The notes under the pieces were generated by a model, which made no database searches, had not been told where the DNA came from, and worked only from the letters and a program-made list of their open reading frames with translations. A stretch of DNA of 64,000 nucleotides, taken from positions 124,001-188,000 of the IMG/VR virus record IMGVR_UViG_3300020154_000003. One strand, given 5' to 3'. How positions within the stretch are numbered: the first letter of the stretch is position 1; every line of letters starts with the position of its first letter. Of this stretch, positions 34,563-56,611 are shown one piece after another. Both the position numbers and the translations under genes were made by a program.

Positions 34563-34970
34563 TTTGTTTCGTTGTTTATACTAAGTTAAACGGGAATTCT
34601 TAATTAAGGTTACAGTATATCCGCTTTTTCTTTGTAGCATTTTTCAGCATACTGAATTGCCTCAAAGTCATCGTTGGCCACAACCAGCCCATGAGTTTCC
34701 CCGAAACTTGTTAGCCAAAAGTATAAGGTTGCCTTTACCTTTCCAACCAGACAAGGGTAAATTCCTGCTTCAGTTGGCACAGGTTCAGCGATACTGAAAA
34801 TATCGTATCCGTTTTCACTCTCCAATTTGCCGTGCAGGTAAGTGAAAGGAATGCGTTTGGAAGGGAAGTCGAAACGTTGCTTTCCTAAAACTGATTCGGG
34901 GTTGATCCTAAGTGTTTCCATATCTCATTAAACGTCAAATAGTTAATTAAGGTTACACAAAAGTAATAAA

Positions 34971-34993
34971 AAAAAGGGACTTTTTTAAGTCCC
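34971..34993 (-). terminator. intrinsic terminator; GGGAC/GTCCC family also near 38363, 38825, 39171 and 40581
   Basis: Hairpin adjacent to an A run on the + strand (U tail on the - strand). Confidence 0.7.
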
Positions 34994-34999
34994 GTATTT

Positions 35000-35884
35000 T
35001 TATGCTGCTTCAACCGTTTCGGTTTCTTTGGTCAACTTTTTGTCGAACAGTTGCAGGATGTTCGCATAGATTTTATTGTCGGCTTCCATGCGTAACTTTT
35101 GCGAAAGGTCTGCTTCACAATTTTCCAAGATAAAGTTCATGGAATTGTAAAGTATCCAAAGGTTCAAGTCACATTCAAACACGTCCATTTCATACTCAAT
35201 CCGTTGAATCGTTTCGTCAATCGACTTGAGCGGGAAGTGAGTTCCTTTGACAAGGTTGCGAATTAATTTTTCAATTTTCGCAGACGTTGGCTTTTCAATG
35301 GTCACGGCTTTCATAAGGTTGATCTGATTTTCAACCGTCTCAAAATTCGTGATATAGTTATCAATGTGGGTTGAAACCTCTTCCATTGAATAAATCGCTG
35401 AGTTGCTATGTTTGAATTCATACACGAAAGAAAGACCTTTCAGGTACGTTGAGAACGTTACAGATACACGTCCCTTTTCGTCAACCATATAGCGAACCAG
35501 CCCACCGATTGCTTGTGCTTTGATTTTTCCATCGTAAGAATTCACGAAAGAAACGGCAGGCAGAATGATTTCAGATTTCGGGCTGACAGTCGGGATAGTC
35601 GGAGTAACGTTCACGAAAAATTGTGCATCTTTCGTTGACTTTACGCGAGTCTCAAAACCTTTGAATTTCTTTTCCAGTACTGGCATAAGAGGTTCGAGCA
35701 CGGCACTGTTTTCAACCAGCTTGTAAACGTCTGAACAAAAGTTCAGGGCTTTTTTACGTTTACCGATACGACCAACAATGGCGTAAGCGTTTTCGCTATT
35801 CACTTCCATTGTCGCATCTTTGAAGAGTTCCACAGTCGCCTCTTTTGTGACAGGGAAACAGATAGCTTTAATTTCGGGATGCAT
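35000..35884 (-). CDS. DUF932-like protein
   Basis: CSDVYKLVEN...NSYDG...F.H...NLW.LYN. Confidence 0.6.
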   Translation of the reverse strand: MHPEIKAICFPVTKEATVELFKDATMEVNSENAYAIVGRIGKRKKALNFCSDVYKLVENSAVLEPLMPVLEKKFKGFETRVKSTKDAQFFVNVTPTIPTVSPKSEIILPAVSFVNSYDGKIKAQAIGGLVRYMVDEKGRVSVTFSTYLKGLSFVYEFKHSNSAIYSMEEVSTHIDNYITNFETVENQINLMKAVTIEKPTSAKIEKLIRNLVKGTHFPLKSIDETIQRIEYEMDVFECDLNLWILYNSMNFILENCEADLSQKLRMEADNKIYANILQLFDKKLTKETETVEAA

Positions 35885-36471
35885 ATTTTTGGTTGTTTGT
35901 TATATCCTATTATACGTACTTAATTCAGAAAGGTTGCCTTAATTTAGAATATTTTTCTTAATTCCCTGCTAGGTACTGGCACGTATCCGGTGAATTCATA
36001 AACCTCCACTATCCTGCCAGCCGTATTGTATTTGACAAATAGCGACCTGTTTTGAGTGTATTCCCTTTTAATGAGTTCAAACACTTTTACGACTGCTAAT
36101 TGAGCACGGACTAAAGTATAGTCGGGATTGCCTAAAATATCGTTGACAGTTTTCATATTAGAATACATAACAGTTCAGTTCATACTTTACTTTCATGCCA
36201 TAGACTTGAACGGCAAGGGCTTTCTTTGACTCTTTGCCATCTTTCAGAAGGGCAATTATATAGCGATTAGTTATTCCCTCAGAAGGTCTTTTTGGCCCTA
36301 CTGTGACCTTATTAAACCAGTCCGTTTCGTCAATGGTGAAACCTTTGGAGGTTGCAACGCGAACGGCCTCTGCCATTGCTGAGGTAAAAGAGTCGTGATA
36401 TAGTTGAAAGTTCATGTGAGTATTAACGTAGTTAATTAAGAAAGGTTGCACTAAATTAAGAAAAAAGCCCG

Positions 36472-36798
36472 TTAATTTACGGGCTGTTCATTTGCAATGC
36501 GAGTCAATTGCTTTGCGTATTTCATGATTTTCTTTTTGGCCATTGCCAGTTGCTTTGCAGTCATGAAACCCTTTTCAATATACCACTTTGCAAATTTAGT
36601 CATGATAAACGCATCCGTACCGTTGAAACCTACTCCATTGTTGTGAGCAGTCGAATCGGAATTCTTTTCGTCTTCCGTTTGACGTTCATAGATTTTCACT
36701 ACCGAACGCATAACAAATTTGTCATCGTTTTCGAGCAGCAATTTGATTTGTTCAACTTGCCAGACTCTTTTTTTGGTTGCTATGATCGTTGTTTCCAT
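36472..36798 (-). CDS. conserved phage hypothetical protein
   Basis: IYERQTEDEK...HNNGVGF..D...KYAKQL. Confidence 0.7.
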   Translation of the reverse strand: METTIIATKKRVWQVEQIKLLLENDDKFVMRSVVKIYERQTEDEKNSDSTAHNNGVGFNGTDAFIMTKFAKWYIEKGFMTAKQLAMAKKKIMKYAKQLTRIANEQPVN

Positions 36799-37311
36799 AC
36801 TGAGTTAAACGGACTTAATTAAGAAAGGTTGCGTTAATTAAGAAATATTTTTCCAGTACTGGTAAAAAAAATAAAAAGTAGGTTGGAGTACACTCTCTCG
36901 AAAACATTGACGTTTTCCACCCATCTTAACATATTGCAGGTTCGATAAGTATATTAACGGCAATACTTAATTAAGGTTGCGTAAAAGCTAAATTATTTTC
37001 GAATTATTTTGGAGGTCTGACAGACCAGTTCAGTTCCCCGTTGTGGATGTAGTAACCAAACTGTTTAAATTTATCCGGGCTGTTCAGTGTAACCCTGATA
37101 ATAAAATCATGTTTCTCCTTTTCGCTCCATTGTTGTGGCATTGTTTGGCTTTCCCTATGTTCCGGGAAGTCGCACCAAAGATTTACAAGGGTATGCATAA
37201 AATGGTCAGTGCTTACCACAAAGTTTGCAAAAGTTAAAATGTGTGCTTTCATATACTGAGTTAAACGGGTAAACTTAATTAAGGTTACATAAAAAGAAAA
37301 AAATCCCTGAT

Positions 37312-38181
37312 TTATTCAGGGACTGACATATAAACGTCTTCCATTATACTATGAGTGTAACCACGTCTAAGGGTATAATTTGGTACTTCATTCTTACCGA
37401 TTAGCACGGCTTTCCAAGTGATATTCCCCTCTGAATCTTTGTAAAGTTTCACGTCCATACCGTCAAAATAATTTGCAAGTTCTTGAGCGGGATTGTTAGT
37501 ACAAAACTCTTCAAAGAATGCGTAAAAGTCACAAAGGGTATTTCTGTTTTCCAAAGTATCGGGAATCATTTTTGCAGCCATACGGTAACCGTATCTATGG
37601 AGGTCAGCAATTTTGCGGAAACTCACAGACTTTTTATAATCTTCCCCGTATTGTCTTTCATCTTCATAGTTAGTATCGGGTGAAAATTGTTTCACCTTAT
37701 TCCAGTACTCAGATATTTGATCTTCCAAGTCATAGTCATTTGTCGGACGTTGTTTCGGTACGTTGCTTTCCAGCGTTGAACCAAACTGAGTATTCCCGCA
37801 TTCAATAGATTCTTGAATCATGTCTTGAGTCGTTAACCTCATTAGTTCAGCATTTGAATAGCGATAGTTACGACCTTGCAGCCTATTCCATACTCCGAGC
37901 GTATTGATATAATACCACATTGCGCCCATTGCAGCCATTTCGCCCCCTACATTCATTGCATAGTCCCCGCGAAAGTATTTGTTTGAATATTCATGACTAT
38001 GTTCAAACACGTCATGAAAAATTCCAGTACCACCCCAAAATGCATTGAATGACGAACCTGAATGGTTATTGTCATAGGTATCTTTGTGCGCTAAACCATA
38101 TTCACCAGTTGCATCGTCACAAAAGAACGTCAATTCGACTTTTTTAACTAACCGTTTCATATTCTTTGTTGTTGTGTTCAT
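37312..38181 (-). CDS. hypothetical protein, possible HD/HExxH-like metal site
   Basis: FHDVFEH...GGEMAAMGA. Confidence 0.7.
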   Translation of the reverse strand: MNTTTKNMKRLVKKVELTFFCDDATGEYGLAHKDTYDNNHSGSSFNAFWGGTGIFHDVFEHSHEYSNKYFRGDYAMNVGGEMAAMGAMWYYINTLGVWNRLQGRNYRYSNAELMRLTTQDMIQESIECGNTQFGSTLESNVPKQRPTNDYDLEDQISEYWNKVKQFSPDTNYEDERQYGEDYKKSVSFRKIADLHRYGYRMAAKMIPDTLENRNTLCDFYAFFEEFCTNNPAQELANYFDGMDVKLYKDSEGNITWKAVLIGKNEVPNYTLRRGYTHSIMEDVYMSVPE

Positions 38182-39188
38182 GAGTATATTAACGGACTTA
38201 ATTAAGAAAGGTTGCCTTAATTAAGATTTTTTTTGAATTATTTCACCAGTACTGGTAAAAAAAAGAGGGCGTGTTGGAGTATACTCGGTGCCGTTTTTAA
38301 GAAACGTTACAAGTATATTAACGGGCAAACCTTAATTAAGGTTACACAAAAGATGAAAAAAAGAGGGACTTTTTTTGTCCCTCCCTTTCGTGTTAACTGA
38401 TTGCACTTTCCGGGCATCCCTCTGCTTTCATTGCCATTTCCTTGGCAGCTTTCAGGGATTGAGCGGTGACCTTTAAAACCTTTGTCCCGTTGTCATGTTT
38501 CAATCTGAGTGCAAAGGTTGTCATTCTTAAGTGTCGAGGCAATTTCATGCGTTTTGTGGGTTACGTAAAAGATTCATTTCGATAACTTTTTCACGGCATT
38601 GTCTACAGCTAGGCAAACTTAATGCCTGCCCCATAAATGTGGGAACCAGATTCAAACTACCTTTACCACCGTTCCATAGTCCTTTCCCGCAAAGGGTAGA
38701 GCCGTGCTGGAATTGTGTCAATCCTTCCCGACTTGCGGGCATGTGAGTAAGATCGTTTAAGTTCGTTGTCATATGTATACTAACGGGCATCCTTAATTAA
38801 GGTTACACAAAAAGGATAAAAAAAAGGGACTTTTTTTCAAGTCCCCTAATTTTCAGGCTGTTAGCAGATGTGCCACTTTGAACTTTGTCACCGTGTCGTT
38901 GAAGTCGTCAGCGAGGTTGTTTTCCTCATAGGTACGTTTCAGTTCTGCCAGTACCTTGAGATTCGATGCACCTTTGGGCAGTCCCACCAGTCTCTTAAAT
39001 TGAGCCTTTACAGGGGCAGCATTTCTGGCGATAGGCATTCCGAATTTAATTTCGGTAATGATCGACATAAGGAGGACTTTTAGAGTGAATGAATTCATAT
39101 TGTTTTTTGTTTTGTTATATGAGTTATAACGGCATTCCTTAATTAAGGTTACACAAAACGAGAAAAAAAAGGGACTTTTTTCAGTCCC

Positions 39189-39551
39189 TTAAATTTTGAT
39201 CGCTTTGTTGGTTACATGTGGCTTATTCCATTTCCCTATGTGGATGTTATAGTAATAATTCGGGATATTACCATAGTCGCCATCGGTTGAAACCGTTCTG
39301 CTTTTTGCGCTGATTATTTCAGCGATTGACAAAAGGAATTCAAGATAAGGCTTTCCCGCATGATGTTCTTTTATGTACATCGGGATAGGATTGAGTTGCA
39401 TGTAATTTTCGGGAAACTCAAAAGGGCTTTCCATTACCGCGACCTCAATGGTCGAAAGGTGTTGGCGTGTTATGCTAAATTTCACATTCGGATATTTAGC
39501 TTTGATCTTTGCCCTCATTTCCTGAACGGTCTCGGTTGTGATATAACTCAT
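39189..39551 (-). CDS. LPD29-like protein
   Basis: R.KIK.KYP.VKFSI...H...YY.NIHIGKWNKP. Confidence 0.55.
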   Translation of the reverse strand: MSYITTETVQEMRAKIKAKYPNVKFSITRQHLSTIEVAVMESPFEFPENYMQLNPIPMYIKEHHAGKPYLEFLLSIAEIISAKSRTVSTDGDYGNIPNYYYNIHIGKWNKPHVTNKAIKI

Positions 39552-39729
39552 AACTTTAACGGTTATAAAGTGAAAGTAAGTAAAAACTGGTTAACACCAA
39601 AAAAACGAAGATGTTTATTATTATGCGTTTCATGAGTATATTAACGGGCAAACGTTAATTAAGGTTACAAAAAAAAATATTTTATTTTTTCGTGAATAAT
39701 GTAACCTTTGTGAATAGTTCACGTTAATA

Positions 39730-39813
39730 TACATACGAACGCTGACAAGCTAGTAGGAGAGCCGAAAAGAAGGAAAAGGAGAGAACGGTTTCTGCAGCCA
39801 TCCGTTCTTTTTT
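39730..39813 (+). ncRNA. candidate small RNA copy 1
   Basis: Promoter at 39701-39727, no ORF, terminal hairpin GAACGG/CCGTTC plus T run. Confidence 0.55.
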
Positions 39814-41091
39814 AAAAAAAAGAGAAACAAAAAAAGGGGATTATTCTCCCCTTGCTTCTTTGTCAAGTTGTTCTTTCAGGTCTTGTTCGTGCTGTTTTTC
39901 AGCCTCGATGTCCAAAAGTTCCTCAACTTGCTGCTCGATAATAAAATCCGGGATTTCGTCTTCCATTGCTTTTTATTTAAGTTGTGGGTATCTCCATAGA
40001 GTATCTTTCACCGTGCGGTTGTTAACTATGACTTTCGTTTCATCCATGATGCAGGAAAGTTCACAGTTCCCGAAGTAGGATGTTTGAGCGTTTTTCTTTG
40101 CTTGTTTCAAAGAATTGCCCCAACCTTCCCGGACTGAATAACCTGATTGTTTCAGGCCATTTTTTTCGCAAAGTACCCTTTCCATTGCATCAGCTAAAAA
40201 GAATTCGACCAATAGAAAGTAGCAGGCGTTTCGTGTTGTTGTGTGTCTCATGAGTATATTAACGGGGATTGTTAATTAAGGTTGCGTGAAAAGAAAAAAT
40301 ATTTTTTGTAACCTTTGTTGCATTGTTCCCGTTAACAATGCCAAACAACGAAAAACTATGAAATTTTATGGCTATGTTCCCACAAAAGAGGGGAAAGAAC
40401 CTTTAGGGACTGAAGGGCGCACAATGTTTGAACTTGAAACAGTTCCGGGCGCAATTCGAAAGATGAGACGGTATGCCAGTACTGTGAATTCTCCTAAACT
40501 TTCCGCTCCATCATTTAAGCTATTCAGCTATTCTAATTTTTACGATCAATCAACTTTTACTGAAATTATTTAAAAGGAAAGGGACTATTTTTTAGTCCTT
40601 TTTAGTCCCTTTTTTTGCCTTTACCCTTGCGTAATTTCCGCTACTCTTATAGTATGTTCCCACATACGTTAGGCCATTCACTGCCTTTATTGTGACTGCC
40701 TGTCGCTTGTCACCAAAGTTTGATCGCCATTCCCTGCCAAGTACCACTACTCCTAATTTGTCGCCTGTCCAAGTTGTGGCGTATGTCATCGGAGTTCCTT
40801 CAGTGATATACAGGAAATAATTCTCAGGCTTATCGTGCATGAATTCGTAGCACTCAACCAGACTGCGAAGATCGTTTGTAACAATGTCCGCATGAGGGAA
40901 TGTCGCACAGATTTCAGCAGGGATGCCATTGGTCTTGTGCAATGTACGGTACTCTAAAGATGCTGCATCGTATTCAGCGATTTTCATCTTGTAGATTGCG
41001 TAATGTTCAGCGTTCATATCGTGTTTGTTTTGTTGTTAAGTATATTAACGGACAATGTACGTAAAGGTTACATAAAATGTTATATTATTTT

Positions 41092-41196
41092 AGGACAATG
41101 TTCACCGTGCCAGTACTGGTATAGGACAATGTACGTGCTGGTTAATTAAGGATAGGACAATGTACGCTGGCAGGGCATGAGGGAAGGACAATGTAC
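41092..41196 (+). repeat. four AGGACAATGT(A/T)C repeats at an exact 31-bp period
   Basis: GG starts at 41093, 41124, 41155 and 41186; a fifth copy at 41050. Confidence 0.85.
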
Positions 41197-41259
41197 ATAA
41201 AATAAAAAAAGGGGGTTAACAACTCCCCCTTTTGAACACAAAACAACAAAACAACAATG

Positions 41260-41898
41260 CTAATTATTATGACCCCATTCACCGTCCCAATTCGGATTGA
41301 TGTGGGAGTTCTTTTTATCTGCGATCATTCGGTCGATGAAAAGTTTCTGTCCGGGATTCAATCCCTTGATGTCAACGCGACCGTTTTTAAATGCTTTCAC
41401 TGAAATCTTTTGAACTAGTTCACCTTTCTCATCCAGAATGTGAATATCCTTCAGGTCGTTACCTGCTGCCCGGAATTCTTTTGCAATGTCAGCAGCGATG
41501 GTAAAATCCGGGTCTTGTTTCTTCAGGATCACAAAGCGAAGGAAACCAAACAGGTTTGTATCCGCATAGTGAATGTCTGAGATGGTATAATGGTCGCCAG
41601 ACTTTCTGAAGTAATAGTGCCAAAACAGGCTGTTATTGTTCGCATACGCGAGAAACAGATTTTTGTTTCCATCGTAATTTTTCTTCAGCCACTGGTCGAA
41701 CCTGTCAGCATTCCACTGAAAAGATTTCGTAAAATCGAACAGGGAGCGACCAAAGAACCTGCTTTCCCTCGGATAATATCCGATATACGTGCTCACTTTG
41801 TTTTCTGTGATTGCTTTCACAGTATCCATCAGGGCATCCTCATCCAATAGATCAAGATTATCGGAGATGTACTTGAGTCTTTTCTGAATTGTATCCAT
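41260..41898 (-). CDS. hypothetical protein
   Basis: 212-aa ORF with its own promoter; VKAFKNGRVDIK. Confidence 0.7.
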   Translation of the reverse strand: MDTIQKRLKYISDNLDLLDEDALMDTVKAITENKVSTYIGYYPRESRFFGRSLFDFTKSFQWNADRFDQWLKKNYDGNKNLFLAYANNNSLFWHYYFRKSGDHYTISDIHYADTNLFGFLRFVILKKQDPDFTIAADIAKEFRAAGNDLKDIHILDEKGELVQKISVKAFKNGRVDIKGLNPGQKLFIDRMIADKKNSHINPNWDGEWGHNN

Positions 41899-42632
41899 TT
41901 TCTTTAGTTGTTTGTTGTTACTACGTTTAACGGAAACAGTTTGAAAAGGTTACATTATTCTTCAGTTATTTGCCCCAAAAGTTCAACCAAGTCAGCAGCC
42001 GTGAATAAATTTCTTCCAGTACCTTCCAGATCATAGCTGGAATTGTATGCAAAATCATCTTCTTCAGCATCTTCAAAATCCATGTTCCCTTCATTTTCAG
42101 TTGCCAGTACCTCCACAATTCCCTTATCGCTTACCCATGCACCAACGATTGACACGTTCTCATCTTTCTCAGCAGCGAAGGGATTATCAATCAGGATTTT
42201 CCCTAATTGTTTTACCTGCTTTATAATAGCTTCGCGGGCCTGATCTTCAATCCCCTGAAGTTGTTCGAGTAATACTATTGATAGCTTATCCATCGGATTA
42301 AAGATTTTTGTCTGAAACAATTTTTTGTGCTTCTTTGAGACTCATTTTCGGTTGCTCATCTTCCCCTGAGAGGTTGAATGCTTCTTCTTCAGTCACAATT
42401 GCTTTTTGTACTGCCGTATCCTGAATGTGGTCAATGAGATTGATGATTCCTTCCAGCGTATCCCATTCAGGTTTGGTGATTGTCTTCTTTGCCTGAAGGT
42501 TAACCAGTACTGATTTTTGTGCTTTCAGTAGGGTGAAGTCCAGTTTCATTAGAACTTCGAATGCGGGTGCTGTTGCCATTTTCTTTTGTTGTTTGTTTTG
42601 TATGTATACTAACGGCTGCTATCCGCAAAAGG

Positions 42633-43331
42633 TTACGCATTCACAAAAGATTTTACGGATTTGTTGTATTGTTTGAATTCTAAATTAAACTTGTCGAATT
42701 CTTTAACGTTCAAACCTCCGAGACCATTTGTGAATAAGTCCACATCTTTCACATAGAAAGATTTGTGTTTGAAATACCACACAACAAAATCGTATGCTTC
42801 TTTCAAAGTAGGGAAACTCATTCCAGCGTACCCACCGATTCCCATTCTGCCAGCTTCGAAACTGAATTGTATGGTTCTGTTCGGGTTCTGCCAGACTTCA
42901 TAAAAGGTTTTTTCCTTTGGAAGTCTTTCCCTACTCCATACGGGTTCGAAAGTTCCCGTTATGGTGAGGTTGTATTTTTTAATTAAGATGCTCTTTCTGA
43001 ATTCAGGGTATTTCATCCCTACTTCACAACGTTGGTTGCCTTTCATGTATTGTTCTGCGAACTCAATTGCAATGCCCAACATAATCGTATCGTGCATACG
43101 CGACCAATTCCAGCTACTAGCCAATTCATTTTCGCATTGAGGCGTTTCAGGAATGCCGTGAACGGCAGCGTGAGCGTATTTGTGAGGGATGCCTGCGAAT
43201 TCCAAAATTTCAATTGCAGCTTCATTCGCTCCGGGAATTTCAATGTATCTTTCCCGGTTTTTGATGGTGGAGAAAGTGATGCCCAACTTTTTGCATACTT
43301 CGAGCACCTTGTTTGTTAATTCCGTTTTCAT
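42633..43331 (-). CDS. hypothetical protein
   Basis: 232-aa ORF with its own promoter. Confidence 0.7.
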   Translation of the reverse strand: MKTELTNKVLEVCKKLGITFSTIKNRERYIEIPGANEAAIEILEFAGIPHKYAHAAVHGIPETPQCENELASSWNWSRMHDTIMLGIAIEFAEQYMKGNQRCEVGMKYPEFRKSILIKKYNLTITGTFEPVWSRERLPKEKTFYEVWQNPNRTIQFSFEAGRMGIGGYAGMSFPTLKEAYDFVVWYFKHKSFYVKDVDLFTNGLGGLNVKEFDKFNLEFKQYNKSVKSFVNA

Positions 43332-46300
43332 CGCTTTGTTGTTTTGTTGTTGCTATGTTTAACGGCTGCTATCCGCAAAGGTTACATTATTTCCGACTAA
43401 ATTTGAAAAAGGATAAAAATAATCGAATTGAACCTCAACAAAATCGGAAGTGAATGCCATAAAGGCCATCAGTTTATTTTTGTAATACACTGAAATTACC
43501 CAACCATTTGTCGAGCGAATTTCAGAACTTACCCTAGGATCAATGTTTTTCACATTCTGAATATCCAGCGTGTAAACACTATGTTTCACCTTTCCTTCGG
43601 TGAGTTTTACGTTACCTCTTTTGAGAGACTGGAAAATCTTTTCGACACGTTTGGGAGTAGTCATTTTGTGTGTTTGTTGTGTTGTACGTATATTAACGAA
43701 AAAACCCTGCAAAGGTTGCAAGGTTTTCGTTTTTTTCTTTTCACCTTTTAGCTTATCGCATGGTGAGTCACATTGCCATCGGGAGTCATAAGGGCATAGT
43801 CAATTTTGATTTGATTCCTACCCTTTGCCGTTTGTGGCCAAATTTCAGCACTTACTACCGAGTTCCCTTTTTCTTTCTGGTACTGGTTCTCTGCTGCGAT
43901 AATTCCTTTCACTTCTTTGAAAGTCATTGCACCGTAACAGGTCTGAGTGCTCAACACTTTTCCACCGTTGGAGAGGTTGATGTTTACTGCGAAGTTACAA
44001 GTTACTGAGCGTCCCATATCGTTTTGTTTTGTTGTTAATTAGTTAAACGTGAACAAAACGAAAAGGTTACGATAATCCGTGAATAAAATTGAATAATTCT
44101 TCCACCTGCAATTCCAAAATTATTTGTAAGGATAGTTCTGAGTCCTCATTCACGAAATCGCCTTGCCTATCTGTAATTGCATAGAAAGGATTATTTATAT
44201 CCTTAATTACACTTCCAAGTAGTACGTGCTTTTCGTATGGAATGTATTTTGTGCTGGCATAGAACTTTGTGACCAGTACTGGCAGATGTGCTGCTACCCG
44301 CTTTTTCCAGTCCTTAAACTTTTCGCGGGCATATCGCTTATATCTTGCGGTTGCCATTACCAGAAAAGTGATTTTGGCAGCTTTGCTTTTTCTCTAATCC
44401 AGTCCATTACTTGTTCAGAATAGTAATGCGTAGTCAACTCATTCAGAAATTGCGTGAGTGTTCTTTGCAGTTGTGGGTCACCGATAGCCACAGTTTCGCG
44501 TGTGAATTCTTTTGCGTTTGACTGGTTGGAAGACTTTCCATAGCCTGTTGAAGTATCCCAATCTTTACCGATAACGGTGATGGTCTTCTTTGTAATTTCA
44601 ACGGTGATAACACCACCTTTGCAGTACTCACCGATTTTGAATGTTTTCGTTGCCATTTAGTTTGTTGTTTGTGTTATACTATCTTTTAACGGCTGCTATG
44701 TGAAAAGGTTACATTCTTTTCAATTTATTTAGCAAACGCATATGTTCATCGATGTATCCTTTCTTTTTCCATTTGATAGGATCGTAACAGAATTGAGGAT
44801 CGAATACCCTTCCCGATTCCCGCTCGAATTCGTTAATTAAGGATAGCAGGCGTTTGACCGTTGGATTGCTTTTTGGAATTTCTTCACCCGTTTTGAGACT
44901 GACAAATTCAACTCCATAGCAGTTAACTACCCATTGGTACTTATCACATACTCGAACTATTTCACCAAGTATTGTATCTTCGATGTGAGTAGCAAGTTTG
45001 TGAAGTTTGTCGTATTCTTTTCGTAGCGTTCTCATAATGTTAATTAACGAACCAGTACTGGAAAGGTTACACTATATAACAAAAAAAAGGGAGAAACTTT
45101 CCCCCTTTAAACTAACCTGTATTTGTAGACAAGTTCTTTCGTGCTTTCCTTTTGCAGGGCTTCTGCGATAGCTTTGCAATAGTCCCGGAAAAACATTTGT
45201 CCACTGCTGAGTCTTTTCTTTTTACTCTTTCGGGCAATTTCATTTACCAAGGCATTGATTTGATGCGTTGGAAGATTCTGAATGTTTTCGACCAAATTTT
45301 CCATAGCTTTATGATTTGTTTTCGTTTCTTTTATTTTTTACGAATTCAGCCCAATACTTGTCTCTGGCCACATGTTCTTTGATGTCCTTACCAGTCATCC
45401 GGTGTGCCAAGGGTGCATCCCATGCGTCACCTATCGGAAGGTGAATAAGTTTCACAGGTTTGGTACTGAAAACTACGTAGGCTGCTTTTCCATCAGCGTG
45501 AGGGATGTAGATCGTTTCCCCTGCGAGTTCATCTTTGCTGTTTTTCTTTGCCCATTCGCGAATGCTATTCACGTAAGCCTCTTCTGCTTCTCTTGATGCT
45601 TTCAAGTTGCGAAAGTCGAATTTCGGTAGTTCGAATTCTTTTGGAGCGTTATAAACTTTTCCCATTGTTTTGTTAGTTTGTTTTGTGTTACTACATTTAA
45701 CGGGAAAGATTTGGTAAGGTTACGTAAAATGTAAATTATTTTCTTTTTTGTATTTCTCCCATTCCGCTATGACTCTATGTTCAGACTCAAACGGATAGCG
45801 GGCGCAAAGTGTGCTCATGAGGTCGCTGGCAAAATAGGCAGCGTTATAGTTTTGCTGAACAGTATACTTTTGGCGTTCATTGTGAATTAACCATTTGGCG
45901 AATTCCAGTAGTTCATTTTTCTTTTCCATCTACGTTAAATGTTTTTCTTGCAACGTTAATTAACTGTTCATCCGTCAATCGTTCTAACCTATGGAATTCA
46001 TTCGAGGTTGCTAAACTTGCATGGATACCACAGGAACATCTTACAAAAAATGCAAGTCCTTTAAGATCATTTCTTACCTGTTCAGGCTTTCTTGTACCAT
46101 AGGCAAGCGATTCCAATTGTATCATGAAGAACCTTTTGATATGACCCTCAATTAACTCCGAAGGAATTTTTTGGTCGTCAGCAATTGGCCTGCCCGGACA
46201 AGATGTATCGTATATTGGATACATTATTCTTTATCTTTGATTGATACCTCAGTTCTTTTATTCCATGTTCTGGAATATCTGAAACCTTTTGCAGATTCCA

Positions 46301-47178
46301 CAACCAGATCAACTTTCCCGGAAGGAGTGCTGATACCTGCTGAGGGAGCGACAACCACTTTCACATTTGTGGGAGTAAGGATGTCACCTACACTTAAATC
46401 TTTTACCAGTTTTTTCACGGCTCAATTGTTTTCTGATTTCTGAAAATAAACAAACTCTTTTATTTCATCCTCGAAGTCACGTTTCACGTCATGAAAGTTA
46501 GGATATTTGCAAGCATAGTATGCTTGAACTTCCTTTTGCTTTTCCTCGGATGAGGCACGATACCATTCCTTTGCATCACTCCAAGATATTGTTTCTGTTT
46601 CCATACCCATATAAACGAAAAAAAGTACTGTAGGGTTACAGTACTTTTCACATTTTTCAAACTTTTTTTAATCTTCGACTGTTACGTCATCCAGTTTCAG
46701 GAAGTCATAGGCATCGGAACCACGTTGGTGTGCTGCTTTTTCTGACCTTTCCTCTAAGCCTTGTATTTGAGCAATTATCCTTGGATACCCGAAACGAGGT
46801 ACGGTAATGTGACCGAACGCTCTACCTTCATCCACAAAGGCATCCGCATAGATGATTCCCTTTTCAGAACCGATCATATAATACTTGATATTCGGGCTGC
46901 TGAAATGGAGTTTCAGTTTTACCGTTTTGCCATTGACAATGCCTGACACTGAAAGATCATCATGGTCAATCAGTACCCGTATATCAATGCCAGTTGCAAT
47001 TGTTGCCAGTACTGACAGAATGAGGGCGATGTCATGCTTTTGATGTGATTGAACAATTTCCATAGTTTTTTGTTGTTTGGTGATATGAGTATAAACGGCA
47101 CTATTCACAAAAGGTTGCCAGAAATTTAAAATATATTTTCTTGAATATTGTAACCTTTTCAAACGGCATCCGTTAATA

Positions 47179-47260
47179 TACATACGAACGCTAACAAAGC
47201 AAGTAGGAGAGGGGAAACCAACCAAATTAGAGGACGGTTATTGCAGGGGTCTGTCTGTTT
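47179..47260 (+). ncRNA. candidate small RNA copy 2
   Basis: Promoter at 47150-47176; ATACGAA..AGTAGGAGAG..ACGGTTATTGCAGGGGTCTGTC. Confidence 0.55.
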
Positions 47261-47284
47261 ACTATTGATGGCAAATATAGGAGG

Positions 47285-47845
47285 TTACAATTCGAACTCC
47301 AAAGTTTCTCCGTTCATTCTGATTTCAACCAACTTGTCAACGCAAAACTGTCTGAACGTATTGGTTTTCAAATTTTTGCGAATGATGTTTTTCGCGATTG
47401 TCAAAGGTGCGCTATTCACTTCCCGGTATCTTACAGGAACCAGCACTTCTTTTGAGATACGATTTCCGTAAACGTAAACTCTGCCAGTTTCATTGTGAAC
47501 GCGAACATTCGGGAAAACTTGGGTATACGTACCCTGCTGCGCCCGCGACTGATTTGATTCATTCTCAATGGCATACAAAAGGGCTATCCGGGCTTGCTCC
47601 GCATATTGAGCCACAGAACCAAATTCGAGACCAGCAATATTGCTAGGGTCGCTAAGGAATTTTCTGTCAGCTTCTTTTGCGTTTGCATAGGAGGCACCAA
47701 CGTTTACCACGTAGTTTGAAATTTCACCCTGATTGTTGCAGTAGTTTTTTACCGATACAAAGGTAGGGGTTTTTTGACCTGCCAAATTCGCATACAATTT
47801 GAGTTGAGCGATAACTTCGGAAGGTGATAAGAGGACAAGTATCAT
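47285..47845 (-). CDS. conserved phage hypothetical protein
   Basis: FVSVKNY.N..GE.SNYVVNVG.SY...Y..VNS.PLTIAK. Confidence 0.7.
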   Translation of the reverse strand: MILVLLSPSEVIAQLKLYANLAGQKTPTFVSVKNYCNNQGEISNYVVNVGASYANAKEADRKFLSDPSNIAGLEFGSVAQYAEQARIALLYAIENESNQSRAQQGTYTQVFPNVRVHNETGRVYVYGNRISKEVLVPVRYREVNSAPLTIAKNIIRKNLKTNTFRQFCVDKLVEIRMNGETLEFEL

Positions 47846-48282
47846 GGTTCGTTTTGTGTTTGGTTATATGTATTATACGGCTGCTTCAATAAAAGGTTGC
47901 GATAATATAGGGTTATTTTTCAATTAATCCATATATCCATGCTCAATTGAAAAGTCACTTTCCTTTGCACCCTCATTCTCAATTAAGTGTGCCTTAACGC
48001 GATCAAAGTAGGCGTAGTTAGTCATATTACCCTGAACAATTCCCTCAGTAATTGTCCTTCCATTTTGTCTTAAGCGCATACCGATGCAGCAAGTTCCTTG
48101 GTCACCCATTTCAGATATGACCTCCTTTGCGATTTGTTTCAGTGTTATTGCGTCCATGTTTTTTTGTGTTTGTTAATATAGAGTTAAACGGCCATGCCCG
48201 CAAAAGGTTGCGTAATTAAGGATAAAAAAAGTTAAATTATTTTCACAAATAATGTAACCTTTGTGAATAGTTCCCGTTAATA

Positions 48283-48356
48283 TACATACGAATCAAGTAG
48301 GAGAGCCGAAAAAAAGGAAATTAGAAAACGGTTATTGCAGGGGTCTGTCTTGTTTA
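48283..48356 (+). ncRNA. candidate small RNA copy 3
   Basis: Promoter at 48254-48280; same conserved blocks as copies 1 and 2. Confidence 0.55.
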
Positions 48357-48474
48357 ACTTATGCCAGTACTGGAAAAAATATTTAAACTATTTTCGTGAA
48401 AAACGTAACCTTTGTACAAAAGTCAACGTATAAAGAGCATACGCAAACAACAAACAAAACAAACTTTACTAGCT

Positions 48475-49278: not shown

Positions 49279-50601
49279 ATAGTACTGGCATGAAAACTAC
49301 AAACCTACTCAGAAAATACAATAGGCTTGAGGACAATAACGATCACAATGAAGCTGCTGCCTTGCTGGTTAATAACTTTGGTACGGATGACGAAAAGCAA
49401 ACCATGAAGGAAATTATTGCCCGTGCTGAAAAACAAAACGGCATGACCAGTGAGGATATAAAATTGAGGTATGAAATATCTCAAAAGTACTATCCGATAA
49501 TCACAGGCAAAGCCTATCCAATACAAAAGAAGTAACCCGGACAATGTTCACCCTTAATTAATAAAGCTATGGACACTCAAAAAATTGATAACCTTATCCA
49601 TCAATTGGATAGTATTGCACGAAGTTACGATGGCTATGAGTATGGCCTGCCTACTCATCATGACCATACGATGATTGAAATGGAGAATGCTATTAAACAT
49701 GCTTTCCCGGACAATGTACAGACCAGTACTGACAAGTCAGAAAAGATGCGGGCGGTATTGGAAAAATTGGTAGCTTCGTTCCCGGAAATGGATACCGATG
49801 AACCAATAGCTGGCAGCGATGCCGTTGACATCCTTTGCGGGATGTGGGATGAAATTAAAGACGCTATAAAATAACCTCCTATGAAAAATCCGATTATCAT
49901 AATTAAGGTTGGTAAAACTGTAATTGGAGATACTAGGGATTCACGTACAACTAATGATGCTAAGAGAAAATTTCTCAAGCAATACTCAGGGTACAATCCT
50001 AAATCAGTTACTGCGACTATTAAATATAACTAATATGGCAAAGAAAAATAAAATTGTCATCACTGACAATAAGGAAATGATAGCAGAGTTCATGAACTTA
50101 ATTAACAAACCCATCTACGAAAAGAAGTCCCCGATGTTCTTTAAGGATGAGGGAGGTTATTACGTAACCAAACTGACTGCCAGTAATGAGCCTGCTGACC
50201 CTAACAAAATGTATGAATTCGGTACGCTCACAGAGGTGCCAGTACCAAATAAAAGGACTGCCATCCAATACGCAAAACAATTCGGTCGCACTGCAATATT
50301 TGGTTAGAATAATGTAACCTTTACGTACAATGTACGTTAGATAACATATGAACAAACGCATCTTAGAATTCGCAAAGCTTCCCTTGGAGGAAAGAATCAA
50401 AGTGATCATGCTCTTCGGAGTATCCCTGATGACTATCCCTCATTGTGGCCTGATTGGTTCACTCTTTACCCTTGGCACTGAGTACGTTGAAATGATGGCT
50501 GATACCCGTACTGGTGAGATAGTTCACCTTGGCATCGCGGATTACAGCGACCTGAATAAGTACGCTGCTCACATCGACCTCGATATTTAATAAACTGTAC
50601 A

Positions 50602-51267: not shown

Positions 51268-51355
51268 TTCGAAACAATTTTCTTAACTTTCGCAACCTTT
51301 ACGTACAATGTACGTTAGTATACATAAAAGAAAATAACTTTAACTAACCACTCTT

Positions 51356-55199: not shown

Positions 55200-55970
55200 T
55201 GTTTAAGTGAAAAATCTAGTCCCAATTGGTTTAATGGCCCCAAGTTAAGAAATTTTATATACCCTCCAAATCACTGACGGTACAATGTACGTTCCCGCTC
55301 GGTAATATTTACCCCTCTCCAGTACTGGCCTATACCAAATGTTCCCGCACGGTAATATATAAATCCCACAACACCATATCCTAATACCAGTACTGGCCCC
55401 TGTCAATATCAACCCCGTTTTGACAGATCGTACAATGTACTGTCAATCTTAATTAAGACTACCCCACAATGTACGGTGATAAACCAGTACCTGTATAATA
55501 AACCTCCCTAGTTTATTATCCGAGATCAGGTTTATTATATGCAATCACATATAATGTACGCCTCTCCAGTACTGGTTATATGCATTCACATATAATTCCC
55601 GTTCATGGCCCATGAACATGTAAACTTCGTGAACAGAAATTTACCAGTACTGGTTCCTGAATTAAGTATCCAGTACCTAATTAAGTATTCGAGTATTAAT
55701 TAAGGTACAGTAAAAAACAGGTACTGGCAGCAGGATACCGCGAAGAAAACGCCCATTCTGGTACTGGTTTCCACTTTTGGTACTTATAAATTTTTATAAA
55801 ACAGGATTCCCAAAATGGTACTGGTCTTAAATCGAGACATGTGGGGCATACATAAACGCTAAAATTTACGTATATGGGTTAAAAATCGCAATATCCAGTA
55901 CTTGAGTAAGATACAAAAGTACGTATACCCCCCCTATTAAGGTACAATTAAAATGGGGTTAAAAACCAGT
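55200..55970. repeat. repeat-dense non-coding region (origin/terminus-like)
   Basis: Four CCAGTACTGG, three ACAATGTAC, several TTAATTAA-like sites; direct repeats GTTCCCGCWCGGTAATAT (55291, 55341) and TTATATGCAWTCACATATAAT. Confidence 0.65.
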
Positions 55971-56611
55971 ACTACTTAACTTGTAAATGTTCGATATAGG
56001 ATTTCATCATTGCGTGAACAATGGAATTAAACATTTCTATTATTGTCTTATTATCAAATTCTTTAATCCTCAACTTAGGATTTTTACGGTTTAATTTCAT
56101 TCTGACGTATAGATCGAATCTATCCCAATCATTCTGTATAGTCTCAGGTAAATGCTTTTTAAAAACATTCAATCTCGACTTTATATATTGATGAACAGAC
56201 TTTACTTTATCGTAATGGCTCTCTGATGAAGCAGCCACTCCCATAAGACCATGAAAAAATACTTCAAATAAAATATAGGTATCGGTTACGTGAGTAGGAT
56301 ATTCTTCTTCCATAACTTATATTTAGGTGGTTTAATTATCTGATCCTAATCTTTTAATGCCAAGGAATTCGATCCATTCATTATAATAGGTCTGACCGAA
56401 TGTTGGAATATATCCTAATCTATGGCAAGTCTGTATTAATAATTCCTTATTTTCAATACGTACTGGAAAGCCATTATTCATAATGACCTGATCACCACGT
56501 TCCAGTTTTTCAAGGAGTCTACCATATTCGACACCATAGGTGAAGGATTGCGATGCATCGGGGAAGGAGATGAATAATTCCATTGGTTATAGGATAAAGT
56601 AAAGTGGGTGA

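What the first reader, a model, noticed from the sequence alone, without database searches (positions are those of the whole stretch)
41050..41196. Iteron-like array with 31-bp period whose spacers carry the other two motifs
Seen: AGGACAATGT(A/T)C four times at an exact 31-bp spacing (about three helical turns). The 19-nt spacers differ; one contains CCAGTACTGG and one TTAATTAAG. Inference: a phased protein-binding platform (replication, partition or injection control) where three DNA signals converge.
Basis: partly seen in the sequence, partly recalled or inferred. Interest (0 to 1): 0.65.

Follow-up and report, generated by a model that had tools for sequence, protein, structure and literature searches.

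The report
Phased operator array beside phage promoter
An uncultured soil jumbo phage has five conserved copies of one 11-bp near-palindrome: one sits inside a phage promoter and four lie just upstream on the same face of the DNA helix, which most likely makes them a docking platform for an unidentified transcription regulator rather than a replication or partition site.

Summary
The repeat is real. GGACAATGT(A/T)C starts at window 41093, 41124, 41155 and 41186, an exact 31-bp period, with a fifth copy at 41050. CCAGTACTGG and TTAATTAAG lie in two of the spacers.

The window belongs to a 366-kb soil jumbo myovirus. About 33 small genes in this region are driven by one promoter type that looks ECF-sigma-like: G(T/C)AACCTT, 12-14 nt, CGTTAA. 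Short palindromes sit in the spacers of these promoters.

The copy at 41050 lies in the spacer of such a promoter on the minus strand, which drives a 141-aa gene. The four periodic copies fill the untranscribed gap between that promoter and the upstream terminator. Their centres lie 43, 74, 105 and 136 bp from the promoter copy, so all five fall on about the same helix face.

The same motif sits in the spacer of the promoter of the phage's ECF sigma gene, here and in two relatives.

In relatives the cores are conserved and the spacers drift (variable columns 5/55 against 32/95). Spacing stays near three or four helical turns (31-32 or 40-43 bp).

Best reading: a cooperative operator array for an unknown regulator. 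No initiator or ParB gene was found. The strict one-strand polarity of the motif is unexplained.

The parts
41039..41072 (-). ECF-type promoter of the 141-aa gene. On the minus strand it reads TGTAACCTT (-35 part), then TACGTACATTGTC (13-nt spacer holding the M copy), then CGTTAATATACT (-10 part). The estimated transcription start is near 41038 (inference).
   Evidence: Found by the pattern scans. The same architecture occurs at about 33 places in window 34.6-52.2 kb, with 46 hits genome-wide against about 9 in shuffles. The flanks are identical to those of the + strand promoters at 50313 and 51291.
41050..41060 (+). M0: GGACAATGTAC, the copy that lies inside the promoter spacer, centred at about -17 (inference).
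   Evidence: Unchanged in the five close variants; altered in the more distant L161.
41061..41092 (.). 32-bp A+T-rich stretch between M0 and M1. It includes the -35 element of the promoter.
   Evidence: Largely conserved in close relatives; a 1-bp length difference gives 42 instead of 43 bp.
41093..41103 (+). M1: GGACAATGTTC, the first stand-alone copy, with its centre 43 bp from M0.
   Evidence: Degenerate in one lineage of relatives: GTACATTTGTCC or GTACATTATCC on the gene strand.
41110..41119 (.). CCAGTACTGG (S motif) centred in the M1-M2 spacer, about 1.5 helical turns from the neighbouring M centres.
   Evidence: Intact in the window and in L158/L160; changed to CTAGTACTGG or CCAGTACCTG in other relatives.
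41124..41134 (+). M2: GGACAATGTAC
   Evidence: Invariant in all six variants.
41141..41150 (.). GTTAATTAAG, matching 9 of 10 bases of the palindrome CTTAATTAAG (P motif), centred in the M2-M3 spacer.
   Evidence: TTAATTAA is kept in this spacer in all six variants, and L161 has a perfect CTTAATTAAG.
41155..41165 (+). M3: GGACAATGTAC
   Evidence: Becomes GAACAATGTAC in L172-L175.
41186..41196 (+). M4: GGACAATGTAC, 10 bp from the terminator.
   Evidence: Invariant in close relatives. In L161 the equivalent copy forms part of the terminator stem.
41207..41233 (-). Two-way intrinsic terminator that ends the upstream 212-aa gene. It has a 9-bp stem and is followed by seven U on the minus strand.
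   Evidence: -12.8 kcal/mol on the minus strand and -13.8 kcal/mol on the plus strand. Conserved in relatives.
40592..41017 (-). The gene served by the promoter: a 141-aa protein of unknown function, with a leader of about 21 nt and no Shine-Dalgarno sequence.
   Evidence: 50 homologues. The AlphaFold2 model has mean pLDDT 93.5 (three helices plus a six-stranded sheet). No Pfam, PHROG or Foldseek-PDB match.
41260..41898 (-). Upstream 212-aa gene of unknown function, which ends at the terminator.
50313..50346 (+). M-class ECF-type promoter in the + strand gene cluster: TGTAACCTT TACGTACAATGTA CGTTAGATAACA.
51291..51324 (+). M-class ECF-type promoter directly in front of the phage ECF sigma gene (51356-51919).
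   Evidence: The same arrangement occurs in relatives L168 and L170.
55278..55971 (.). 694-bp non-coding hub at a convergent gene junction. It is the second place where the M, S and P motifs cluster: 3 M, 4 S plus many GGTACTGG-like sites, and 2 P.
   Evidence: Conserved in L168 at 13386-14040.

Best explanation
The array is a cis-regulatory operator platform for transcription.

A sequence-specific DNA-binding protein, probably a dimer and not yet identified, recognises the 11-bp near-palindrome G(G/T)ACA-A-TGTAC (called M here). One site, M0, lies in the spacer of an ECF-sigma-type promoter and directly abuts its CGT -10 element. Occupying it should gate RNA polymerase at the 141-aa gene.

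Four more sites lie at about -60, -91, -122 and -153, in the untranscribed gap between that promoter and the terminator of the upstream gene. They are on the same helix face as M0. They would load further copies of the protein that cooperate with the one at M0, sharpening repression or possibly activation; the sign cannot be told from sequence.

The same protein would act at the other two M-class promoters, including the promoter of the phage's own ECF sigma gene. That would tie this gene to the sigma-factor switch.

The TTAATTAA palindrome, and in this strain CCAGTACTGG, sit between M sites on the opposite helix face. Each also occurs in the spacers of other promoters of the same type, so regulators of those two classes could compete or cooperate with the M-binding protein on the array.

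Shown: the anatomy, the promoter context, the conservation and the phasing. Inferred: protein binding, dimer binding, cooperativity, and the sigma factor that reads the promoters.
For: 1. Promoter context. The window holds a recurrent promoter, [T/C]G[T/C]AACCTT-N12-14-CGTT(A/T)A. It fits the AAC-N16-CGT layout typical of ECF sigma promoters (established knowledge). There are 46 genome hits against about 9 in shuffles, and 33 of them lie in window 34.6-52.2 kb, upstream of nearly every small gene. The copy at 41050 lies in the spacer of one of these on the minus strand, with the same flanks (AACCTTTAC...CGTTA) as the + strand promoters at 50313 and 51291.

2. A sigma gene preceded by this promoter. 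ORF 51356-51919 is an ECF-type sigma factor (Sigma70_r2 and Sigma70_r4_2). It is preceded by an M-class promoter here, in L168 (88% identical sigma) and in L170 (59%). This layout is typical of an autoregulated ECF sigma gene. A small zinc-ribbon-like ORF follows it, on weak Pfam matches only.

3. Other promoters of the same type carry other palindromes in the spacer. TTAATTAA occurs in 13, a GTGAATAGTTC-like sequence in 4, and CCAGTACTGG in one, at 45071. So spacer palindromes look like exchangeable control modules.

4. Position. The four periodic copies lie between a terminator and the promoter, so they are not part of either neighbouring mRNA.

5. Phasing. The M centres lie 43, 74, 105 and 136 bp from M0, which is 4.1, 7.05, 10.0 and 12.95 turns at 10.5 bp per turn (sequence).

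6. Conservation. Across five distinct close variants from other soil samples, 5 of 55 core columns vary against 32 of 95 spacer columns (Fisher p = 7e-4). A 1-bp deletion and a 1-bp insertion within one spacer cancel out and keep 31 bp. A relative whose 141-aa protein is 73% identical keeps three perfect cores at 40/31/40 bp among unrelated spacers. Spacings seen are 31-32 or 40-43 bp, that is three or four turns.

7. Stand-alone copies elsewhere are conserved too. (C)GGACAATGT(A/T)C(A) lies about 20 nt before the stop codon of the GP88-family gene in four phages, down to 51% sigma identity, while its flanks diverge.
Against: - No binder is identified. No HTH_3, HTH_17 or RHH_1 domain was found anywhere in the 366-kb genome. 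The neighbouring proteins have no recognisable DNA-binding fold.
- A symmetric dimer does not explain the strict polarity. All 18 copies have the central A, and GG where present, on the + strand. Relative to the minus-strand promoter, M0 is therefore flipped compared with the two + strand M-class promoters.
- In the + strand cluster every copy is in the sense orientation. Five lie within 20 nt of a start codon, and three of those contain the ATG itself. That would also suit an RNA-level signal.
- The copy nearest the promoter (M1) has decayed in one lineage.
- Homologues of the 141-aa gene at 63% identity or less have no array. The array is a lineage-specific addition and not essential to that gene.
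- The promoter and the estimated transcription start are predictions only.
- The available runs were laid only as assembled contigs, which gave no usable expression evidence.
Confidence: 0.5

Rival explanations
1. The motif acts on RNA. GGACAAUGUAC on sense transcripts would be bound by a phage RNA-binding protein or cut by a nuclease, in the manner of a translational operator such as the T4 RegA sites (from memory). The array would then be a short + strand non-coding RNA of about 40-190 nt, ending at the two-way terminator, that carries 3-5 such sites and soaks up that protein.
For: - All 18 copies are on the + strand. All copies in the + strand gene clusters of four phages are in the sense orientation.
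- Five cluster copies lie within 20 nt of a start codon, and three contain the ATG.
- The hairpin at 41207-41233 also folds on the + strand (-13.8 kcal/mol, followed by UUUU).
- The phage does make small promoter-plus-terminator units without an ORF, on the + strand inside minus-strand gene regions.
Against: - No promoter of the phage's own type points into the array on the + strand. The nearest is at 40307, and it is closed by a terminator at 40577-40603.
- Three copies sit in promoter spacers and always abut the -10 element, which is a DNA-level position.
- Several copies lie deep inside ORFs or in the non-coding hub, far from any start codon.
- The array RNA shows no notable fold beyond the terminator (z = -2.0).
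Confidence: 0.15
2. The array is a replication origin: iterons bound by a phage initiator next to the A+T-rich 32-bp stretch, which would unwind. Comparable cases are lambda ori and T4 oriE (both from memory).
For: - There are four to five repeated binding sites, each an inverted repeat, phased on the helix and next to an A+T-rich segment, in an intergenic gap.
- Unrelated phages of about 40 kb carry repeats of the near-identical GGACAATGTCC inside their replisome-organiser genes, which is the classic position of an origin.
Against: - No Phage_rep_org_N or Rep3_N gene is in the genome, and there is no tblastn match to those organisers.
- GC skew follows gene orientation and shows no feature at genome position 165 kb.
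- Thirteen further copies are scattered through a gene cluster 8-14 kb away, three of them in promoter spacers, which an origin does not explain.
- The A+T-rich stretch contains the -35 element of the promoter.
- Replication genes (PolB, ribonucleotide reductase, an SbcCD-like protein) lie far away.
Confidence: 0.1
3. The sites are boxes for a host regulator. The likeliest candidate is a LexA-like SOS repressor of a Bacteroidota host, whose known boxes are 11-bp GGA-N5-TCC palindromes. That would make this gene and the sigma gene respond to host DNA damage.
For: - M has the same architecture as the published box: 3-bp arms and a 5-bp centre, 11 bp in all, with an identical left arm GGA (PMC8565304).
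- That paper reports two or more boxes per promoter as common, and divergent specificities among paralogues.
- The host is probably Bacteroidota. There is no Shine-Dalgarno enrichment (8% against 7% background), leaders are A-rich, the phage has DUF5122 propeller proteins, and Flavobacterium phages are among the nearest tail-sheath relatives.
- No phage-encoded classical repressor domain was found.
Against: - The right arm is TAC (or TTC), never TCC, in all 18 copies. Half the copies have GTA rather than GGA on the left. In the paper, changes to either arm abolished binding.
- The centre ACAATGT is as conserved as the arms, unlike the published box.
- The host is unknown, so its regulator and its own boxes cannot be checked.
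Confidence: 0.1
4. The array is a centromere-like or packaging-related platform, where repeated sites organise the genome through a partition adaptor or the small terminase subunit rather than controlling a gene.
For: - The layout is repeated palindromic sites at a fixed period with unlike spacers, next to a promoter. R1 parC and F sopC are comparable (from memory).
- A second non-coding cluster of the same three motifs exists at 55278-55971.
- CTTAATTAAG occurs 41 times across the genome, where roughly one would be expected from base composition (my estimate).
Against: - No ParB_N was found, and no partition or terminase gene lies nearby.
- M is confined to 14 kb of the genome.
- A large lytic-type myovirus has no evident need for a plasmid-style centromere (inference).
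Confidence: 0.05
5. The array is a leftover of a tandem duplication of a 31-bp unit and has no function of its own.
For: The ends of the spacers are also alike (..CCAGC / ..CCAGCAC before each core on the gene strand), so the array did arise by tandem duplication. One copy has decayed in a relative.
Against: The cores are far better conserved than the spacers. Three perfect cores survive in a relative whose spacers are unalignable. An insertion and a deletion compensate to keep the period.
Confidence: 0.05

Closest known systems
Cooperative operator arrays at phage promoters (lambda OR/OL with CI; phi29 p4 sites). Comparison from memory.
   Same: Several copies of a short, nearly symmetric site. 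One overlaps the core promoter and the others lie upstream on the same helix face, giving cooperative occupancy that sets a developmental switch.
   Different: The sites here are 31 bp apart (three turns) rather than adjacent. The promoter is ECF-type. No repressor gene is recognisable. The motif keeps a single genomic orientation. Two other palindrome classes are interleaved.
Autoregulated ECF sigma promoters (AAC-N16-CGT type, e.g. Bacillus SigW/SigM, E. coli RpoE). Comparison from memory.
   Same: The -35 AAC and -10 CGT elements are at the standard distance, the same promoter stands in front of the sigma gene itself, and a small Zn-ribbon-like ORF follows the sigma gene.
   Different: The spacers carry conserved palindromes, which is not a known feature of ECF promoters. 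Dozens of promoters serve tiny phage genes, many apparently without a leader. Which of the three phage sigma-like proteins (or a host sigma) reads them is untested.
Plasmid R1 parC / ParR and F sopC / SopB centromeres. Comparison from memory.
   Same: Phased repeats next to or around a promoter bind an adaptor cooperatively. sopC has a palindromic core inside a longer repeat period (43 bp).
   Different: There are no par genes and no ParB_N domain in the genome. There are only 4-5 sites, and the same motif is used in promoter spacers elsewhere.
Origin iterons inside replisome-organiser genes of small Firmicutes-type phages (SPP1 G38P type)
   Same: Nearly the same word (GGACAATGTCC) is repeated 2-3 times in eight viral contigs, inside Phage_rep_org_N genes.
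   Different: Those repeats lie within a coding region, are irregularly spaced (20 and 31 bp) and belong to unrelated phages. The jumbo phage has no such initiator. The likeness is best taken as coincidence.
Bacteroidetes LexA-like SOS boxes GGA-N5-TCC (PMC8565304)
   Same: An 11-bp palindrome with 3-bp arms, the same left arm, and often several boxes per promoter.
   Different: The right arm is TAC and the centre is conserved. The sites belong to a phage, and the host regulator is unknown.
T4-type promoter-early stem-loop cassettes (PeSLs). Comparison from memory.
   Same: Small genes of a variable region are each flanked by a repeated promoter plus a terminator hairpin. Relatives differ by loss of a whole gene between two promoter repeats: a 750-bp skip with 20 shared letters at the joint.
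   Different: That concerns the surrounding region, not the array. The promoters here are ECF-type rather than sigma-70 early promoters.

Membership tests
Iteron-type replication origin | Three or more direct repeats of an initiator-binding site at helical spacing in a non-coding stretch | tested here: met
   Five copies at 43/31/31/31 bp in a 242-bp intergenic gap.
Iteron-type replication origin | A cognate initiator gene (Rep, replisome organiser or O-like) encoded nearby or elsewhere in the genome | tested here: not met
   No Phage_rep_org_N or Rep3_N in 366 kb. No tblastn match to the organisers that carry GGACAATGTCC repeats. Neighbouring ORFs have no family match. Unknown initiator families cannot be excluded.
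Iteron-type replication origin | Replication starts at the site | not testable with these tools
   GC skew is uninformative because it follows gene orientation. This needs marker-frequency or 2D-gel data.
Partition centromere (parS / parC / sopC) | Adjacent or genome-encoded ParB/ParR-type adaptor and ParA/ParM motor | tested here: not met
   No ParB_N in the genome. The flanking genes are of unknown function. ParA, ParM and ParR were not searched for.
Operator array of a transcription regulator | At least one site overlaps the core promoter of a gene | tested here: met
   M0 lies in the spacer of the predicted promoter at 41039-41072 and abuts its CGT -10 element. The promoter itself is predicted, not mapped.
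Operator array of a transcription regulator | Sites are conserved relative to the sequence between them and keep their helical phase in relatives | tested here: met
   5/55 against 32/95 variable columns, p = 7e-4. Spacings are 31-32 or 40-43 bp in six variants.
Operator array of a transcription regulator | The same site recurs at other co-regulated promoters (a regulon) | tested here: met
   M lies in the spacers of the promoters at 50313 and 51291 (the sigma gene), and at the equivalent promoters in L168, L170 and L171.
Operator array of a transcription regulator | A DNA-binding protein that recognises the site | tested here: inconclusive
   No HTH_3, HTH_17 or RHH_1 in the genome. The S24 ORF lacks a DNA-binding domain. 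The only recognised DNA-reading domains are in three sigma-like ORFs. Most ORFs are unannotated, so a novel binder or a host protein remains possible.
ECF sigma-dependent promoter | -35 AAC and -10 CGT elements about 16 nt apart | tested here: met
   GTAACC-TTTACGTACATTGTC-CGTTAA at 41072-41045 on the minus strand. The pattern is enriched fivefold over shuffles.
ECF sigma-dependent promoter | An ECF sigma gene preceded by the same promoter (autoregulation) | tested here: met
   The sigma ORF 51356-51919 has this promoter at 51291. The same holds in L168 and L170.
ECF sigma-dependent promoter | Transcription depends on that sigma factor | not testable with these tools
   Needs in vitro transcription or mapping of transcription starts.
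Bacteroidetes LexA-like SOS box (GGA-N5-TCC) | Both 3-bp arms GGA and TCC, 5 bp apart | tested here: not met
   The length and the left arm fit in 10 of the 18 copies; the rest have GTA on the left. The right arm is TAC or TTC in all 18. In PMC8565304, changes to an arm abolished binding.

The most novel reading that the evidence does not exclude
The array would be a three-input control platform of a kind not yet described in phages. Binding sites for three different palindrome-reading regulators (M, P and S) are interleaved on opposite faces of one 150-bp stretch. Each of those regulators also occupies the spacers of its own subset of ECF-type promoters.

On this reading the array either integrates the three temporal signals at one gene, or acts as a decoy that soaks up the M-binding factor and so times the switch-on of the phage's ECF sigma gene.

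The strict single-strand polarity of M would then point to an unusual asymmetric reader, for example a sigma-domain-like protein or one that reads a single strand.
Probability: 0.15. Interest if true: 0.7.

Novelty: new variant of a known kind. Interest (0 to 1): 0.45.

Why it matters
Gene regulation in jumbo phages of soil bacteria is almost unknown. This locus gives a concrete, testable wiring diagram:
- a phage ECF-type sigma factor with its own promoter class;
- about 30 promoters of that class in front of small genes, many of which appear to make mRNAs with little or no leader;
- interchangeable short palindromes in the promoter spacers that would divide the promoters into sub-regulons.

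The array is the densest cluster of one of these palindromes, so it is the best bait for finding the unknown binder, for example by DNA pull-down or gel-shift assay.

If the binder proves to be a new kind of DNA reader, or if the array proves to be a decoy or an integrator, that would add a new regulatory device to phage biology. If it is an ordinary repressor array, the promoter system around it would be the main result.

Tried and rejected
- Known phages. A megablast of 5 kb around the array against 50,697 phage records found nothing. Protein-level hits for the tail sheath and the sigma factor are only distant: 32-42% for the sheath (Microcystis and Flavobacterium phages, a huge uncultured phage) and 26-31% for the sigma factor.
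- Searches for related loci. Using the two flanking proteins and the sigma factor against viral contigs found no relatives.
- Pattern scans. The viral-contig scan for two copies 31 bp apart returned only unrelated phages of about 40 kb with GGACAATGTCC repeats inside replisome-organiser genes. The metagenome scan with a variable gap returned 120 stretches, about what chance would give on my rough estimate. tblastn of all the phage's ORFs against them found no relative of this region. That scan was wasted.
- The motif as a promoter. Copies M1-M4 lack the AAC and CGT elements at any workable distance, and no -10-like element follows at a fixed distance. The sigma-70 scan gives no more hits than shuffles do.
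- The 141-aa protein as the binder. The model is confident but matches no known fold, there is no Pfam or PHROG match, and a profile search against solved structures found nothing. More distant homologues have no array.
- Other candidate binders. The GP88-family protein and the 221-aa protein were also considered. Family scans, a search of solved structures and atlas look-ups gave no functional lead.
- Classical DNA-binding, initiator and partition domains: none found in the genome. The single S24 peptidase ORF has no DNA-binding part.
- Rfam: only tRNAs in the window.
- Sequencing runs. The runs labelled metatranscriptomic hold even, DNA-like contig coverage of a roughly 90-95% identical relative. 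They give no strand, transcript-end or expression information. They were useful only for showing that variants exist.
- Literature: no paper in the library contains the M motif.
Full report
**The observation**

Window 41018-41259 is a 242-bp gap between two minus-strand ORFs: 40592-41017 (141 aa) and 41260-41898 (212 aa). GGACAATGT(A/T)C starts in it at 41093, 41124, 41155 and 41186, exactly 31 bp apart. A fifth exact copy starts at 41050, 43 bp before the first. CCAGTACTGG (41110-41119) and TTAATTAAG (41142-41150) are centred in the first two 20-nt spacers; the third spacer has neither.

None of this is chance:
- With one mismatch allowed, the motif gives 20 hits in the window against 2.5 in shuffles.
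- The other two motifs give 41 against 0.9 and 50 against 2.
- G[GT]ACAATGT[AT]C occurs 18 times in the whole genome, always on the + strand and only in window 41050-55440.

**The genome**

The window is bases 124001-188000 of a 366,038-bp IMG/VR virus record from a soil metagenome.
- It encodes a tail sheath, a family-B DNA polymerase, an SbcCD-like protein, ribonucleotide reductase and a large polyvalent protein.
- It has three sigma-like ORFs but no RNA polymerase subunit that I could find. The T7-type search rang in no control genome, so that blank is uninformative.
- Known phages are only distant relatives.
- Shine-Dalgarno motifs are not enriched upstream of ORFs (8% against 7% background) and leaders are 45% A. 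Together with DUF5122 propeller proteins and Flavobacterium phages among the sheath hits, this suggests a Bacteroidota host. That is an inference.

**The surroundings explain the motif**

Listing every intergenic gap of window 24-62 kb shows that nearly every small gene between 34 and 52 kb is preceded by the same signal: [T/C]G[T/C]AACCTT, 12-14 nt, CGTT(A/T)A, often continuing as TATAC. This is the AAC-N16-CGT layout typical of ECF sigma promoters (established knowledge). The pattern has 46 genome hits against about 9 in shuffles, and 33 of them lie in window 34.6-52.2 kb. In many cases the start codon follows the -10 part by a few bases, so many of these mRNAs would have little or no leader.

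ORF 51356-51919 is an ECF-type sigma factor with regions 2 and 4. It is preceded by this promoter, the usual sign of autoregulation, and is followed by a 58-aa ORF with weak zinc-ribbon matches.

The spacers of these promoters often hold a short palindrome:
- TTAATTAA / CTTAATTAAG (P) in 13;
- a GTGAATAGTTC-like sequence in 4;
- CCAGTACTGG (S) in one;
- GTACA(A/T)TGT(A/C)C (M, the motif of this finding) in three.

The three M-class promoters are at 50313 (+), at 51291 (+, the sigma gene) and at 41072 (-). Read on the minus strand, the 'fifth copy' at 41050 is the spacer of TGTAACCTT-TACGTACATTGTC-CGTTAATATACT. This has the same flanks as the two + strand M-class promoters.

**Anatomy of the array**

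Going leftwards on the minus strand:
1. The 212-aa gene ends at a good intrinsic terminator, 41233-41207. It has a 9-bp stem, -12.8 kcal/mol, and is followed by seven U.
2. Ten bases later comes M4, then M3, M2 and M1 at 31-bp steps.
3. Then come a 32-bp A+T-rich stretch that contains the -35 element, M0 in the promoter spacer, the -10 element, a leader of about 21 nt, and the ATG at 41017.

The four periodic copies therefore lie in DNA that neither neighbouring gene transcribes. Their centres are 43, 74, 105 and 136 bp from the centre of M0. That is 4.1, 7.05, 10.0 and 12.95 helical turns, so all five fall on about one face. S and P are centred about 1.5 turns from the adjacent M centres, on the other face.

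**Relatives**

Laying contigs from other soil runs showed strains about 90-95% identical. The 141-aa protein has 50 homologues. Their contigs, and contigs reached through a neighbouring gene, gave the upstream DNA.
- Five distinct close variants keep the array. Spacings are 31/31/31/43 in the window, 31/31/31/42 in L157/L158, and 32/32/31/41-42 in L172-L175.
- Core columns vary at 5 of 55 positions and spacer columns at 32 of 95 (Fisher p = 7e-4).
- One spacer has a 1-bp deletion and a 1-bp insertion that cancel out.
- In L172-L175 the copy nearest the promoter has decayed.
- L161, whose protein is 73% identical, keeps three perfect cores at 40/31/40 bp among unalignable spacers. It has a perfect CTTAATTAAG in the 31-bp spacer, and its distal core forms part of the terminator stem.
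- So the exact 31-bp period is not conserved, but a spacing of three or four turns is.
- TTAATTAA is kept in its spacer in all six variants. CCAGTACTGG is intact in only two.
- Homologues at 63% identity or less have no array, although L176 has the same promoter type.

**The motif elsewhere**

The + strand cluster (48.4-55.3 kb: a GP88-family protein, small ORFs, the sigma factor) holds 11 M copies. The non-coding hub that follows it, beginning at 55278, holds two more exact copies and one core-only copy.

The cluster was recovered from three relatives with 88, 59 and 51% identical sigma factors. In all of them M is in the sense orientation. Two subtypes are conserved:
- GTACAATGTA directly abutting CGTTA in promoter spacers;
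- a stand-alone (C)GGACAATGT(A/T)C(A), for instance about 20 nt before the stop codon of the GP88-family gene in all four phages, with diverged flanks.

The array copies M1-M4 are of the stand-alone subtype. The 694-bp non-coding stretch at 55278-55971, at a convergent gene junction, again combines M, S and P with other repeats. It is conserved in L168.

**Interpretation**

The simplest reading is an operator array. A protein reads M; one site gates the promoter; the four phased upstream sites add cooperative occupancy. The same protein would act at the sigma gene's promoter, and P- and S-reading factors could interfere on the array.

The weak points are these:
- No binder is recognisable. There is no HTH_3, HTH_17 or RHH_1 domain in the genome, and the one S24 ORF has no DNA-binding part.
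- The 141-aa protein has a confident model with no known fold match.
- The strict polarity is unexplained. All 18 copies have the same strand orientation, so M0 is flipped relative to its promoter when compared with the two + strand M-class promoters.
- In the gene cluster the copies are all sense, and five are at or next to start codons.

This polarity keeps alive an RNA-level reading, in which the array would be a + strand decoy RNA ending at the two-way terminator. I found no promoter pointing into the array, and the position in promoter spacers argues for DNA.

**Other readings**

- Origin. This reading has the iteron-plus-A+T-rich look, and near-identical repeats occur in the replisome-organiser genes of unrelated phages. 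Against it, there is no initiator, no skew signal, and no account of the scattered copies.
- Partition. No ParB was found.
- Host regulator. A literature lead is that the LexA-like SOS repressors of Bacteroidetes bind 11-bp GGA-N5-TCC boxes (PMC8565304). M shares the length and the left arm but never the right arm, so it is not a canonical box. A host regulator of related type cannot be excluded.

**Verdict**

It is best explained as a phased operator platform attached to an ECF-type phage promoter. This is a new variant of a familiar kind of element, set in an undescribed promoter and palindrome system of a soil jumbo phage. Replication, partition and injection control are not supported. The binder, the sign of regulation and the cause of the strand polarity remain open.

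Noticed in passing
window 34600-52300 (also genome 203-208 kb): There is a family of about 33 near-identical ECF-type promoters ([T/C]G[T/C]AACCTT-N12-14-CGTTAA) in front of small genes. Many have the ATG only a few bases after the -10 part, so the mRNAs would have little or no leader. Most are paired with a GGGACTTTTTT..GTCCC-type terminator, giving promoter-plus-terminator cassettes.
   Followed up: partly
window 55278-55971: A 694-bp non-coding hub lies where the + and - gene clusters converge. It holds 3 M, 4 CCAGTACTGG plus many GGTACTGG-like sites, 2 TTAATTAAG and several other direct and inverted repeats (for example TTATATGCA(A/T)TCACATATAAT twice). It is conserved in relative L168 at 13386-14040. 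It could be an origin or a regulatory hub.
   Followed up: partly
whole genome (e.g. window 3919, 8542, 10046, 15432): CTTAATTAAG occurs 41 times in 366 kb, where base composition predicts about one (my estimate). Many copies lie inside coding regions far from the promoter region, so the motif has a genome-wide role beyond promoter spacers.
   Followed up: no
window 31513, 52705, 52922, 54255, 57809, 60564 and others: CCAGTACTGG (26 in the genome, 21 of them in window 31.5-60.6 kb) often makes up almost the whole gap between two co-directional genes, sitting 1-4 nt before the ATG on either strand. At 54682 it overlaps an M copy (CCAGTACTGGACAATGTAC).
   Followed up: partly
window 39734-39830, 47183-47270, 48287-48360 (+ strand): Three related units without an ORF each sit behind their own ECF-type promoter (TACGAA..CAAGTAGGAGAG..ACGGTT.TTGCAG..). 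The first ends in a hairpin plus a T run. They are candidate phage small RNAs and have no Rfam match.
   Followed up: partly
window 1412-1659: There is a tRNA cluster: two tRNA-Ile and one tRNA with anticodon CTA, which would read the TAG stop codon. ARAGORN calls the last one tRNA-Pyl, and Rfam scores it 67 bits as a tRNA. It may be an amber suppressor. Whether the phage recodes TAG was not examined.
   Followed up: no
window 42600-43360: The 232-aa gene 42633-43331 is missing in relatives from three other soil runs. The contigs skip 750-789 bp, with up to 20 shared letters at the joint, and the joint falls in two copies of the promoter repeat. This looks like gain or loss of a gene cassette by recombination between promoter repeats.
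   Followed up: partly
window 51916-52092: The 58-aa ORF directly after the ECF sigma gene has weak zinc-ribbon matches and is 95% conserved in L168. It is a candidate anti-sigma factor.
   Followed up: partly
window 48475-49278: The GP88-family protein (PF17338) is the first gene of the + cluster and by far the best conserved one: 97, 89 and 82% identity in relatives whose sigma factors are 88, 59 and 51% identical. It has a cysteine cluster (CAKATKECIMGC). Its function is unknown.
   Followed up: partly
window 51721 and 51776 (inside the sigma gene): Two ACAATGTAC cores lie within the sigma coding sequence, both encoding T-M-Y, and both are present in L168 and L170. This could be coding constraint or an internal regulatory site; it is undecided.
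   Followed up: no
genome 106655-106993 (outside the window; L180 356-694): A short S24-peptidase ORF without a DNA-binding domain is preceded by CTTAATTAAG and a GGTACTGG site.
   Followed up: partly
L009-L016 (viral contigs of 23-47 kb): Unrelated small phages carry 2-3 copies of the perfect palindrome GGACAATGTCC inside their replisome-organiser (Phage_rep_org_N) genes. These are probably their origins.
   Followed up: partly
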